A program made the translations under genes and the position numbers. Source: Calcarisporiella thermophila CBS 279.70 (Eukaryota > Fungi > Calcarisporiellomycota). From it: a stretch of 64,000 bases of DNA. Below the pieces are notes generated by a model that worked only from the letters and a program-made list of their open reading frames with translations, did no database searches and was not told the origin of the DNA. Shown one piece after another: positions 14,217 through 16,067 of this stretch. The stretch spans positions 506,492 to 570,491 of the forward strand of contig NW_027192208.1 in assembly GCF_041956535.1 (NCBI RefSeq), read 5' to 3'. The stretch's first letter is position 1. Each line of letters starts with the position of its first letter.

Positions 14217-16067
14217 TTACTCGACATCACTCTGACACTTGGGGCAGGAGCACTCGTAACGATAGCGCTCCAAGTCCTTCTTGCGTTCCTCCAGGGATCG
14301 GTCGGCCACCTCTATAAAGCTCACTCGCAATTCGTCGCCCGCTTTAATGGGCTTCGCAGCAATCAAGCTCAAGGTGTGGTCCTCTCGGAAATCGACCTTC
14401 ACGTTAGGAACACAAGAGTGCACCATGTAGCTCGTTGCGCGGTAAAGACCAGAACCAATGATGGGTCTCTCGCGGGGACTGCGGAGTTGGTCACTAGGCT
14501 AAAGCGCGAACACGCACCGCGGAAATGCAAGTCAACCGTCAATTTTCCCTCTTACCAAATCTCTCGATGCCTAAATCTCTCACCTGAACAACTCCCTCAA
14601 CTCCGTATATTCCGTACAGGTTATAGAGCAATTTTCCTTTGAGTAGGAGGTATCTCTCGTCGTTCAAAAACTCCTCCACACCCGGTACTTTGCCGCGCAA
14701 TGCCACCTTCAGAGCCTCCATCTCACGCTCCTCCTCCTTGGTTTTGGGCAGATCGAGGTAACGCAGCCTCTCGATATGATCCCAGGCGGTTTCTTCGGCG
14801 GCGTTTGGATCGGTGACCTTCTGCATCTCATCATGAACCATGGTGGTGAGGAATCGGGCAATCATCGATGGAATTTTGGAGGATTGTTCGAGCTCATGCA
14901 ACGGCGCAGCCTCGGGGCCGCAGATATGGTTGTGATATTTGGCAGCGGCCTTGTCTTTGCAAGAGGTGGAGCAGTAGACAGCCCGATCGCACTTTTCGCA
15001 AGAAATTTTGGACTCATCGGTCACCTTACGCATGCAATAATCGCAAAATTCTTTGCCCTGAAAAAGAAAAACCCATTACGGGGGGTTTGAGATAAAGACA
15101 CATCACGACAAATCACAGGGCAGAAACGAACCAATAGCTCGGGTTCCAACATAGAGAGTAACGGTTCCTCACGATAGATCAGCTCGTTGGCTTCGAAATC
15201 TTTGGTAGCTACAAGGGCACGGCGTATGATTGTCTTACCGTCGGCAGTGTGTCCTTCCGGAATCTCTCCGATCTTCACGTTCCATTCTGCAGGCGGGTAG
15301 GACTCGTAGTATTGCTCTTGCTTACGCTTGATCTACACAAACGAATACGTGAATAGATCATATTAAACTTTAGAAAGCGATCCAGAGCACCCACATCAAG
15401 CTGCATCATCCCCATAACCAATGCAAATACACTCTCCGGAATGGTTTTTTGGTAGATCATTACTAGCTCCATCGGTTGCGGATAGACCTTGAGAGCCTTA
15501 AAGAAGCAGATTGCGGCTTCCTGGTGTTTGCTTTCACCTGATAGAGTTTAATTTTCGAGGTATAAGCTAAGGGCCGCCGTGGATTCTTGATAACCAGCAT
15601 TATCTTACCCTGAACAAAAAGTGCTTCTCCCTTGGAGATGTAATCCATGAAATATTTCTCTTTTGCCTCCACTGAATCGGGGAATTTCTCTTTGTCCACC
15701 TCCTCCAAAGCACTCTTGAGCGAATCGAGGAGTTCCTTCTTGCTCGCCTCTTCCTTCTCCTGTTTGACCTTTTGTGCCCTCTTTTTCTCTTTCTCTACAT
15801 AGAATTAAAAATAAAGAATATTCATAGATTAGCAAAAGTGGGCTGCATGGTACCGAAATGGGTTGATCCATCGAGTTTTAGTATCGTGTTTCATGATTGA
15901 AGGATGTAGCCTATGTCTGAGCTGTCAATCGTAAGCGGAAACTTACTCAATTTTCTTCTGAACTGCGGATCATTTCTTCGCTTGTGATCAAAGTAAATTG
16001 CATATCCAACTCCAGCAGCCGCCAATGCGCTCAAAACACACAGCGTAATCACTGTCGATTGCTTCAT
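14217..16067 (-). CDS. TOM20: Tom20 (MAS20) mitochondrial import receptor fused to a SMYD-type SET/MYND domain
   Basis: N-terminal TM plus 'GYAIYFDHKRRNDPQFRRKL' and 'FFKALKVYPQPMELVMIYQKTIP' identify Tom20. Phase-0 intron 15333-15394 joins it in frame to 'RALVATKDFEANELIYREEP', the MYND cysteines, 'VHSCVPNV' and post-SET 'CSCPKC'. Confidence 0.88.

What the first reader, a model, noticed from the sequence alone, without database searches (positions are those of the whole stretch)
14217..16067. Tom20 import receptor fused to a probably catalytically dead SMYD-type SET/MYND domain
Seen: a complete Tom20 (TM anchor, FDHKRRNDP, TPR-like core) splices in frame through intron 15333-15394 (GAT|ATC) into a split SET domain with an intact MYND finger and post-SET cysteines. 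All three SET catalytic signatures are altered: motif I GxG reads 'RRAL', NHSC reads 'VHSC', and the catalytic Tyr of ELxxSY reads 'ELRVSF'. Known: yeast and animal Tom20 carry no such domain, and SMYD proteins bind Hsp90. I recall similar Tom20-SET gene models in basidiomycetes and other non-ascomycete fungi, but no functional characterisation. Inference: a cytosol-facing pseudo-methyltransferase on the mitochondrial surface, acting as a chaperone or precursor docking module or a methyl-lysine/peptide reader.
Basis: partly seen in the sequence, partly recalled or inferred. Interest (0 to 1): 0.8.

Follow-up and report, generated by a model that had tools for sequence, protein, structure and literature searches.

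The report
Tom20 receptor fused to SMYD-like domain
The only Tom20 mitochondrial import receptor gene of this fungus (Calcarisporiella thermophila) really does carry a 300-residue SMYD-type SET/MYND module that has lost key catalytic residues; the fusion is ancient and widespread in non-ascomycete fungi, is already in databases, and has never been studied functionally.

Summary
A six-exon minus-strand gene (16067..14217) encodes 468 aa. These are a complete Tom20 (MAS20 profile 3-131 of 132), a conserved helix/linker, and a SMYD-type N-lobe (split SET, MYND, post-SET, no C-terminal TPR domain) ending in SDVE. My exon model equals the public protein of Calcarisporiella thermophila. It is the only MAS20 locus in the 28-Mb genome.

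The same architecture occurs in more than 100 fungi: chytrids, Blastocladiomycota, Zoopagomycota, Mucoromycota and Agaricomycetes. The junction intron is positionally conserved in 8 of 9 lineages. In Allomyces it is absent, so one exon spans the junction.

The window protein has Val for the SAM-contacting Asn and Phe for the catalytic Tyr (SMYD3 N205 and Y239). Published Y239F kills SMYD3. Three paralogs in the same genome keep NH and Y. Across 116 orthologs, Asn survives in 4, the first Gly of motif I in 1, and Tyr in 74. Mucorales copies lost His and post-SET. The module is nevertheless under strong purifying selection (dN/dS 0.055).

Best reading: a non-catalytic docking module on the receptor. 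No RNA run was available. A 2022 survey mentions the architecture in one sentence, and its function is unknown.

The parts
15947..16067 (-). Exon 1 (aa 1-40 plus the first base of codon 41): start codon, TM anchor, basic flank FDHKRRNDPQFRRKL
   Evidence: (MAS20 profile 3-29, E 6.7e-11)
15987..16055 (-). Predicted N-terminal membrane anchor, about aa 5-27, hydrophobic and followed by a K/R-rich flank
   Evidence: Direct reading. Helix 3-32 in the AF2 model. Aligns to Tom20 in the C. thermophilum TOM complex 9i7s_K.
15795..15946 (-). Intron 1 (152 nt, GTAAGT..TAG, phase 1); position conserved in all 8 orthologs threaded
15609..15794 (-). Exon 2 (186 nt, the same length as in Umbelopsis, Podila, Diversispora and Basidiobolus): Tom20 linker and start of the TPR-like core
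   Evidence: (MAS20 32-90, E 4.8e-9)
15538..15608 (-). Intron 2 (71 nt, GTAAGA..CAG, phase 1)
15395..15537 (-). Exon 3 (143 nt, the same length in 5 other lineages): end of the Tom20 core, ...MGMMQLD
   Evidence: (MAS20 92-131, E 9.5e-14)
15333..15394 (-). Junction intron 3 (62 nt, GTGGGT..TAG, phase 0) between the Tom20 and SET parts. If retained it reads 39 codons, shifted out of frame in exon 4, to TGA at 15277-15275.
   Evidence: The position is conserved in 8 of 9 lineages and absent in Allomyces.
15132..15332 (-). Exon 4 (201 nt): conserved linker (KxxQxxYYxxYPP) and N-SET strands. Motif I reads R187-R188-A189-L190 at 15224-15213.
   Evidence: (P163 invariant, F/Y162 at least 90%)
15058..15131 (-). 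Intron 4 (74 nt, GTTCGT..CAG, phase 0)
14584..15057 (-). Exon 5: MYND finger (aa 222-263, 15045-14920, all 8 Zn ligands present) and helical I-SET region
14499..14583 (-). Intron 5 (85 nt, GTGAGA..TAG, phase 0)
14217..14498 (-). Exon 6 plus stop: C-SET with VHSCVPN (14423-14403), F436 (14318-16), post-SET C458-x-C460-xx-C463 (14252-14235) and the C-terminal S-D-V-E (14231-14220)

Best explanation
One gene encodes the only Tom20 of this fungus as a two-module outer-membrane receptor. The N-terminal anchor puts everything else in the cytosol. The Tom20 TPR-like presequence-binding core runs through a predicted continuous helix and an invariant F/Y-P-P linker into a SMYD-type N-lobe (split SET, MYND finger, I-SET helices, post-SET zinc cluster, no C-terminal TPR lobe). 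The protein ends in an acidic S-D-V-E tail of the kind that closes ordinary fungal and animal Tom20. In this species the SET pocket lacks the cofactor-binding Asn (Val401), the catalytic Tyr (Phe436) and both glycines of motif I. It therefore most likely does not methylate. It is kept as a folded protein-binding module (peptide cleft, MYND finger, acidic tail) that adds a second docking surface for precursors, chaperones or other TOM receptors next to the import pore. Shown here: the architecture, single-copy status, conservation, purifying selection and residue states. Inferred: the topology, the loss of activity and the docking role.
For: Gene model: the exons carry MAS20, zf-MYND and SET and are exact stretches, in order, of the public protein P0195. 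Full-length Pfam gives MAS20 4.6e-45, SET 1.2e-11 and MYND 2.5e-5.

Sole Tom20: PF02064 hits only this locus in the 28.2-Mb genome.

Fusion is conserved. In a HMMER search with exon 5, the hits of about 480 aa start their match near residue 217-223. Of 29 full-length hits, 29 have MAS20 and 28 have SET. About 105 named fungal orthologs were found. The junction intron is positionally conserved in 8 of 9 lineages, and a single exon spans the junction in Allomyces.

Structure: AF2 pLDDT 94.4, pTM 0.84, helix 137-161 across the junction. Residues 162-468 align to SMYD2 5-272 (Z 22.8, rmsd 2.6 A over 255 residues). Residues 19-152 align to Tom20 9i7s_K (Z 17.6).

Inactivity: V401 aligns to N205 and F436 to Y239. 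Y239F abolishes SMYD3 activity and Asn205 H-bonds AdoHcy (PMC3105404). SMYD5 Y351A is dead. Three paralogs in the same genome keep NH..Y. Family-wide, Asn is present in 4 of 116 and the first Gly in 1 of 116. Mucorales copies lost His, Cys and post-SET.

Constraint without catalysis: dN/dS is 0.055 for the SET-MYND part against 0.063 for Tom20 in two Umbelopsis species.

Tail: 36 of 44 orthologs that end just after post-SET end in D/E. Stand-alone fungal Tom20s end -DIE, -PIE, -DVE or -NVE. The Tom20 DDVE tail binds the Tom70 clamp (PMC6212638).
Against: No transcript data: none was listed for this locus, so splicing rests on comparative evidence and the public model. Tyr is retained in 74 of 116 orthologs and His in 83 of 116. 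Several pocket residues are invariant or nearly so (N363, the SMYD3 N181 equivalent; G390; Y394). SAM binding, or weak activity in some lineages, therefore cannot be excluded. No partner has been identified. A two-chain test of Tom20 core against the SET lobe gave no verdict.
Confidence: 0.6

Rival explanations
1. The module is an active, membrane-tethered lysine methyltransferase that modifies precursors, TOM subunits or translation factors at the mitochondrial surface, using a divergent cofactor-binding mode.
For: The fold is an intact SMYD N-lobe with the post-SET zinc cluster. H402, Y454, Y456, N363, G390 and Y394 are kept. 74 of 116 orthologs keep the catalytic Tyr. The nearest free-standing relative, SMYD5, is an active CTD-less enzyme acting on a ribosomal protein.
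Against: The window has the natural equivalent of SMYD3 Y239F, which abolishes activity. It also lacks Asn205 and both motif-I glycines. The Asn position is free to vary (G, S, T, M, A...) across the family. Mucorales copies keep Tyr although His, Cys and post-SET are gone, so Tyr retention does not track an intact active site.
Confidence: 0.2
2. The fused mRNA is a minor form. The main product is an ordinary short Tom20 made by retaining the junction intron or ending in it, and the SET-MYND part is expressed rarely or separately.
For: In Agaricales the junction 'intron' encodes a conserved tail (...SSQEWDKVTDP...). That tail is the C-terminus of annotated 199-209-aa Tom20s, and the SET exons lie directly downstream. 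One Umbelopsis annotation lists a SET-only 'variant 2'. No RNA data for the window.
Against: Here the intron is only 62 nt. Read-through gives 39 out-of-frame codons with no conserved or acidic tail. The SET part has no Met before residue 211. The linker across the junction is among the best-conserved segments (P163 invariant) and lies in one predicted helix. The SET part is under the same purifying selection as Tom20. Allomyces has no intron at the junction.
Confidence: 0.1
3. It is an annotation artefact: two neighbouring genes (Tom20 and a SET-MYND gene) are wrongly merged.
For: Some Agaricales annotations split the locus into two genes.
Against: There is no stop at the end of exon 3 and no start codon for the SET part. 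The intron is a 62-nt in-frame GT..AG with no room for a terminator and a promoter. More than 100 independent gene models agree. A single exon spans the junction in Allomyces.
Confidence: 0.03

Closest known systems
Canonical Tom20 (yeast, Neurospora, Chaetomium thermophilum TOM holo complex 9i7s; human TOM20)
   Same: It has the N-terminal anchor with a basic flank and the full MAS20 domain. It is 40% identical and at 2.8 A rmsd to C. thermophilum Tom20. It has an acidic D-V-E C-terminus. It is the sole copy, so it is presumably the presequence receptor.
   Different: About 300 residues of SMYD-type SET/MYND fold lie between the Tom20 core and the acidic C-terminus. Canonical Tom20 has only a 20-60-residue disordered tail there.
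SMYD5 (animal RPL40 K22 trimethyltransferase)
   Same: It is the closest non-fused sequence relative of the family (E 6e-15). It has a split SET with a MYND insert and post-SET, no C-terminal TPR lobe, and an acidic C-terminus.
   Different: SMYD5 keeps GxG, NHSC and the catalytic Tyr and is active. This genome has its own canonical SMYD5-like gene on contig 20, so the Tom20-linked module is a paralog, not the SMYD5 ortholog. It is membrane-tethered through Tom20.
SMYD2 / SMYD3 / SMYD1 (solved structures)
   Same: They are the best structural matches (Z 21-23, about 255 residues, rmsd 2.6-3.3 A) over the SET, MYND, I-SET and post-SET regions.
   Different: It lacks the TPR-like C-terminal domain that closes the substrate cleft and is linked to Hsp90 binding. 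N205 is Val, Y239 is Phe and G15/G17 are Arg/Ala.
'Group 25' fungal SET genes with an upstream MAS20 domain (J Fungi 2022, PMC9692433)
   Same: This gene is a member of that group. MAS20 lies upstream of SET, and the group is absent from Ascomycota.
   Different: The paper gives one descriptive sentence. It does not discuss Tom20 function, catalytic residues, copy number, gene structure or isoforms.

Membership tests
Tom20 / MAS20 (PF02064) | Full-length match to the MAS20 profile above the curated cut-off | tested here: met
   153.4 bits against a cut-off of 27, profile 3-131 of 132. Each of exons 1-3 is above the cut-off on its own.
Tom20 / MAS20 (PF02064) | N-terminal single membrane anchor followed by a basic flank (N-in, C-cytosol) | tested here: met
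   A hydrophobic stretch at about aa 5-27 is followed by DHKRRNDPQFRRKLKKEKKR. It aligns from residue 6 to Tom20 of the solved TOM complex. The topology itself is inferred.
Tom20 / MAS20 (PF02064) | TPR-like cytosolic fold of solved Tom20 | tested here: met
   Model residues 19-152 against 9i7s_K: Z 17.6, rmsd 2.8 A, 133 residues, 39% identity.
Tom20 / MAS20 (PF02064) | Binds presequences and works in the TOM complex | not testable with these tools
   Inferred from it being the only MAS20 locus in the genome.
SMYD family (SET and MYND domain proteins) | SET domain split by a MYND zinc finger, followed by a post-SET Cys cluster | tested here: met
   zf-MYND at 222-263 lies between N-SET (169-217) and C-SET (365-440). 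C458-x-C460-xx-C463 is present. Z 22.8 to SMYD2.
SMYD family (SET and MYND domain proteins) | C-terminal TPR-like domain (SMYD1-4; absent in SMYD5) | tested here: not met
   The protein ends at residue 468, five residues after post-SET. It aligns only to SMYD2 residues 5-272.
Active SET-domain lysine methyltransferase | Invariant catalytic Tyr (SMYD3 Y239, SET7/9 Y335) | tested here: not met
   F436 aligns to Y239. Y239F abolishes SMYD3 activity (PMC3105404).
Active SET-domain lysine methyltransferase | N-H of the NHSC motif (the Asn side chain binds the cofactor) | tested here: not met
   V401-H402: Asn is lost and His is kept. Asn is present in only 4 of 116 orthologs.
Active SET-domain lysine methyltransferase | GxG of motif I | tested here: not met
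   R187-R188-A189. The first Gly is present in 1 of 116 orthologs and the second in 70 of 116.
Active SET-domain lysine methyltransferase | SAM binding and methyl transfer | not testable with these tools
   Needs recombinant protein.
MAS20-SET 'Group 25' (PMC9692433) | MAS20 domain upstream of a SET domain in one fungal protein, non-ascomycete | tested here: met

The most novel reading that the evidence does not exclude
The ancestral fungal Tom20 was a two-module receptor. Its SMYD-like lobe, no longer an enzyme but with part of the cofactor pocket and the lysine channel conserved, works as a ligand-gated or lysine/peptide-reading gate. It could sense SAM, or capture Lys-rich precursor segments, ribosome-associated factors or the Tom70 clamp, and so couple cytosolic state to presequence import. 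Dikarya later uncoupled the two halves by using the junction intron as an alternative terminal exon, and the model yeasts lost the module altogether.
Probability: 0.15. Interest if true: 0.85.

Novelty: new variant of a known kind. Interest (0 to 1): 0.62.

Why it matters
Tom20 is the textbook presequence receptor, and nearly all mechanistic work comes from ascomycete yeasts, Neurospora and mammals, where it is a small protein. In this genome the receptor, which is the only copy, carries a conserved and strongly selected 300-residue SMYD-like module. Chytrids, Blastocladiomycota, Zoopagomycota, most Mucoromycota and many Agaricomycetes carry the fused gene as well.

This implies that the ancestral fungal TOM complex had an extra cytosolic module that the model organisms lost. 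It also offers a clear natural case of a SET domain kept for a non-catalytic role. C. thermophilum is a thermophile, which helps biochemistry and cryo-EM of its TOM complex. Mucor, Mortierella, Umbelopsis and Coprinopsis offer genetics. The Agaricales locus looks like an intermediate between fused and split states, so the evolutionary route is testable too.

Tried and rejected
RNA evidence: the look-up of sequencing runs listed no run for the locus. 'None was listed' does not mean 'none exists'.

Joined model: I did not hand a self-joined spliced protein to any search tool. The exons were searched one by one by reference. Full-length work used the public protein P0195 returned. A script showed that P0195 contains the six exons in order.

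Complex prediction on the Tom20 core (62-150) against the SET lobe (165-468) returned 'no answer' with score 0.00. This is not evidence either way. I therefore do not claim that the two lobes pack against each other; only the continuous linking helix and the high single-chain pTM are reported.

Literature searches for Tom20+MYND+SET, Tom20+SMYD+fungi, and Tom20+lysine methyltransferase+early-diverging fungi found no functional study. A Mucorales methyltransferase survey does not mention the family.

Hsp90 binding through a SMYD C-terminal domain is rejected because that domain is absent.

The idea that the SET part is the genome's SMYD5 ortholog is rejected. A canonical SMYD5-like gene sits on contig 20.

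dS was saturated for the Podila/Haplosporangium pair, so only dN could be compared there.
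Full report
**1. What is in the sequence**

The gene lies on the minus strand. Reading the reverse complement gives six exons with GT..AG introns:
- E1 16067-15947
- E2 15794-15609
- E3 15537-15395
- E4 15332-15132
- E5 15057-14584
- E6 14498-14220, with the stop at 14219-14217

The introns are 152, 71, 62, 74 and 85 nt long.

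Pfam results:
- MAS20 on exons 1, 2 and 3, covering profile positions 3-29, 32-90 and 92-131 of 132. Each exon is above the curated cut-off.
- zf-MYND on exon 5.
- SET on exon 6.

**2. The model equals a public protein, and the organism is identified**

A HMMER search of 1.8 billion representatives with exon 5 found 211 relatives. The hits of about 480 aa start their match near residue 217-223, as expected for the same architecture. A follow-up word search returned P0195, 'uncharacterized protein VTP21DRAFT_3721 [Calcarisporiella thermophila]', 468 aa.

A script showed that the six window exons are exact stretches of P0195 at 1-40, 42-102, 104-150, 151-217, 218-375 and 376-468. Residues 41 and 103 are the two split codons. 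The window therefore comes from C. thermophilum (Calcarisporiellomycota), or from a genome identical at this locus. I used P0195 as the reference for full-length analyses.

Pfam on P0195:

| Domain | Residues | E-value |
|---|---|---|
| MAS20 | 14-144 | 4.6e-45 |
| zf-MYND | 222-263 | 2.5e-5 |
| SET | 397-435 | 1.2e-11 |

**3. Is the fusion real?**

No RNA run was listed for the locus, so direct junction reads are missing. The comparative evidence is strong.

- **Shared architecture.** All 29 full-length relatives scanned carry MAS20 and 28 carry SET.
- **Taxonomic breadth.** About 105 named orthologs share the architecture:
  - Mortierellomycotina, Mucorales, Umbelopsis, Endogonales, Bifiguratus and Glomeromycotina.
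  - Zoopagomycota (Piptocephalis, Syncephalis, Dimargaris, Coemansia, Smittium and others) and Basidiobolus.
  - Blastocladiomycota (Allomyces, Blastocladiella, Catenaria, Paraphysoderma, Coelomomyces).
  - Chytrids (Polychytrium, Rhizophlyctis, Entophlyctis, Thoreauomyces).
  - Agaricomycetes (Coprinopsis marcescibilis, Lentinula, Heliocybe, Crepidotus, Botryobasidium, Auricularia, Trametes, Tulasnella and others).
- **Gap to other families.** The next best non-fused relative is animal SMYD5 at E 6e-15, far below the family, whose weakest fused hit has E 3e-66.
- **Conserved junction intron.** I threaded eight orthologous proteins onto their genomic loci.
  - The 143-nt exon that ends the Tom20 core, followed by a phase-0 intron, occurs in Umbelopsis, Podila, Diversispora, Basidiobolus and the chytrid Polychytrium.
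  - The same junction is present in Phycomyces and Coprinopsis, although neighbouring introns differ.
  - In Allomyces macrogynus there is no intron there. One 353-nt exon runs from the Tom20 core into the N-SET strands, so the two parts form one reading frame.
- **No room for two genes here.** Exon 3 has no stop, the SET part has no Met before residue 211, and the intron is only 62 nt.
- **Conserved linker.** The linker is among the most conserved segments. P163 is invariant, and F/Y162 and V169 are at least 90% conserved in 65 sequences.
- **Possible transcript-level support.** One ortholog (P0197, 485 aa) is filed under the plant Anthurium amnicola. To my knowledge that species' public proteins come from a transcriptome assembly. 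If so, P0197 is a fused fungal mRNA. This point rests on memory and was not tested.

**4. Structure**

AlphaFold2 on P0195 with a 65-sequence alignment gave mean pLDDT 94.4 and pTM 0.84. A single helix spans residues 137-161 across the exon 3|4 junction.

Structural matches by VIA-align:

| Model residues | Best match | Z | rmsd | Aligned residues |
|---|---|---|---|---|
| 162-468 | SMYD2 residues 5-272 | 22.8 | 2.6 A | 255 |
| 19-152 | Tom20 in the C. thermophilum TOM holo complex (9i7s_K) | 17.6 | 2.8 A | 133 |

SMYD3 and SMYD1 score nearly as well as SMYD2. The aligned part of SMYD2 is the SET-MYND-I-SET-post-SET N-lobe only. The TPR-like C-terminal lobe of SMYD1-3 has no counterpart, and the protein ends five residues after post-SET. 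In this respect it resembles SMYD5.

A two-chain test of the Tom20 core against the SET lobe gave no verdict. I do not claim that the lobes pack against each other.

**5. Catalytic residues**

HMMER aligns P0195 385-465 to SMYD3 189-268 in native numbering:

| P0195 | SMYD3 |
|---|---|
| S398 | S202 |
| V401 | N205 |
| H402 | H206 |
| F436 | Y239 |
| Y454 | Y257 |
| Y456 | F259 |
| C458, C460, C463 | C261, C263, C266 |

With A192 anchored on SMYD3 A20 by the first HMMER stretch, motif I R187-R188-A189-L190 corresponds by my counting to SMYD3 G15-N16-G17-L18.

Xu et al. 2011 (PMC3105404) report three relevant facts:
- The Asn205 side chain H-bonds the homocysteine amine of the cofactor.
- Tyr239 is the Tyr conserved in all SET enzymes.
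- Y239F, like Y239A, completely abolishes SMYD3 activity.

In SMYD5, H316L, Y351A and Y372A abolish activity on RPL40. The window protein is thus a natural equivalent of the Y239F mutant that also lacks the cofactor Asn and both motif-I glycines.

This is gene-specific. Three other SET/post-SET genes in the same genome keep N-H and Tyr. They lie on contig 20 (SMYD5-like, '...INHDC...CISY...'), contig 5 and contig 15.

**6. The family view changes the picture**

Residue states over 116 fused orthologs:

| Position | State |
|---|---|
| First Gly of motif I | Gly in 1; Arg or Lys in 95 |
| Second Gly of motif I | Gly in 70 |
| Asn of NHSC | Asn in 4; otherwise G, S, T, M, A... |
| His of NHSC | His in 83 |
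| Catalytic Tyr | Tyr 74, Phe 35, Trp 3 |

Phe occurs in at least seven clades. The Asn and first-Gly changes are therefore ancient and family-wide, while the Tyr-to-Phe change is recurrent and lineage-specific.

Mucorales copies have gone further. 22 of 26 have Gln for His, the Cys is lost, and 23 of 26 lack the post-SET cluster entirely. All 26 still keep the Tyr, so Tyr retention does not track an intact active site.

The MYND finger's first zinc site (C222, C225, C246, C250) is essentially invariant. The second site (C237, C240, H259, C263) is kept in only 39-43 of 65 sequences. The window has all eight ligands.

Despite this erosion of catalytic positions, the module is strongly constrained. 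Between two Umbelopsis species, dN/dS is 0.055 for the SET-MYND part and 0.063 for the Tom20 part. In a Mortierellaceae pair, dN is 0.080 against 0.069, with dS saturated.

This pattern, a fold under purifying selection with catalytic positions free to vary, is what a pseudoenzyme with a binding role predicts. Some pocket residues remain invariant (N363, the SMYD3 N181 equivalent; G390; Y394), so cofactor binding without turnover is not excluded.

**7. Copy number and paralogs**

PF02064 hits only this locus in the 28.2-Mb assembly, and exon 5 has no paralog. The fused protein is therefore the only Tom20 here.

Mucorales differ. They also have stand-alone Tom20 genes of 161-184 aa. These are 47-63% identical to the Tom20 part of the fused paralog in the same species. 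This fits the heavier decay of their fused copies.

**8. The C-terminus**

Stand-alone fungal Tom20s end in -DIE, -PIE, -DVE, -NVE or -NIE, like the animal DDVE that binds the Tom70 dicarboxylate clamp (PMC6212638). The window protein ends -SDVE.

- Of the 44 fused orthologs that end within 12 residues of post-SET, 36 end in Asp or Glu.
- Over all 116 orthologs, 58 end in D/E, against a 16% D+E background.
- Several long-tailed orthologs end -DDVE, -GDVE, -GEVE, -QEVE or -MDIE.

The SET-MYND module thus looks inserted between the Tom20 core and its acidic end. The tail is a candidate Tom70 or chaperone-clamp ligand; this is inference.

**9. Isoforms**

In the window, retaining the junction intron would add 39 out-of-frame codons up to TGA at 15277-15275, with no conserved or acidic tail.

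In Agaricales the picture is different:
- The 388-nt junction 'intron' of the fused Coprinopsis marcescibilis model reads through in frame for 50 codons.
- That stretch is clearly homologous to the conserved tails (...SSQEWDKVTDP...) of the annotated 199-209-aa Tom20s of Coprinopsis, Ephemerocybe, Candolleomyces, Collybiopsis, Psilocybe, Tricholomella and Clathrus.
- In Ephemerocybe the short Tom20 gene is followed on the same strand by the SET-MYND exons, which are annotated as a separate gene.

There the locus gives a conventional Tom20 and possibly also the fusion. This looks like an intermediate on the way to the split or lost state of other Dikarya. It does not apply to the 62-nt intron of the window.

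**10. Known or new**

The gene model is public. A 2022 survey of fungal SET genes notes in one sentence that 'Group 25' genes, absent from Ascomycota, carry MAS20 upstream of SET (PMC9692433). I found no functional work.

As far as I could find, these points are new:
- the sole-copy status;
- the family-wide loss of Asn and the first Gly, with recurrent Tyr to Phe;
- the purifying selection on the module;
- the conserved junction intron and the Allomyces single exon;
- the SMYD5-like lobe without a C-terminal domain, distinct from the genome's own SMYD5-like gene;
- the retained acidic tail;
- the Agaricales read-through tail.

**11. Verdict**

A pseudo-methyltransferase is likely for this species (about 0.7-0.75). 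The docking role is plausible but untested. The Hsp90 rationale is not supported.

This is a real, conserved and unstudied variant of a textbook receptor. I score interest at 0.62.

Noticed in passing
L011:1613-2000 (Coprinopsis marcescibilis) and L021:4001-6361 (Ephemerocybe angulata): In Agaricales the Tom20|SET junction 'intron' encodes, in frame, a conserved 50-codon tail (...SSQEWDKVTDP...). This tail is the C-terminus of annotated short Tom20s in at least 7 genera. The SET-MYND exons follow within about 250 nt on the same strand and are annotated either as fused or as a separate gene. The locus is a candidate alternative-isoform or gene-fission intermediate.
   Followed up: partly
P0274-P0312 compared with P0205-P0231 (Mucorales proteins): Mucorales carry both a plain Tom20 (161-184 aa, ending -DIE, -PIE or -DVE) and a fused paralog. 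The Tom20 parts are only 47-63% identical within a species. The fused paralog's SET part has lost His, Cys and the whole post-SET cluster.
   Followed up: partly
window 14220-14231 (-): The fused protein ends in S-D-V-E, like the D-[VI]-E end of ordinary fungal Tom20 and the DDVE of animal Tom20 that binds the Tom70 clamp. 36 of 44 orthologs that end just after post-SET end in D/E.
   Followed up: partly
G000:C20:524594-525380 (-), outside the window: A canonical SMYD5-like SET/MYND gene ('...INHDCSPN...CISY...FDCECESC') lies in the same genome. Two further SET/post-SET genes with intact NH and Tyr lie on contigs 5 and 15.
   Followed up: partly
P0256 compared with P0253 (Umbelopsis sp. WA50703): An annotated 'tom20 variant 2' is exactly residues 166-483 of the fused protein. 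It is a soluble SET-MYND-only form starting at an internal Met. The window has Trp at that position, so this form is not available here.
   Followed up: partly
L010:1794-2124 (Polychytrium aggregatum): The 331-nt junction intron reads through for 17 codons ending ...EEITVE, an acidic Tom20-like end. Diversispora also has an unusually long (531 nt) junction intron.
   Followed up: no
Alignment A2, columns of P0195 C237, C240, H259 and C263: The second zinc site of the MYND finger is lost in about 40% of family members, while the first site is invariant. This explains why Pfam zf-MYND hits only 16 of 29 members.
   Followed up: partly
Only about 355 nt separate the two stop codons.
   Followed up: no
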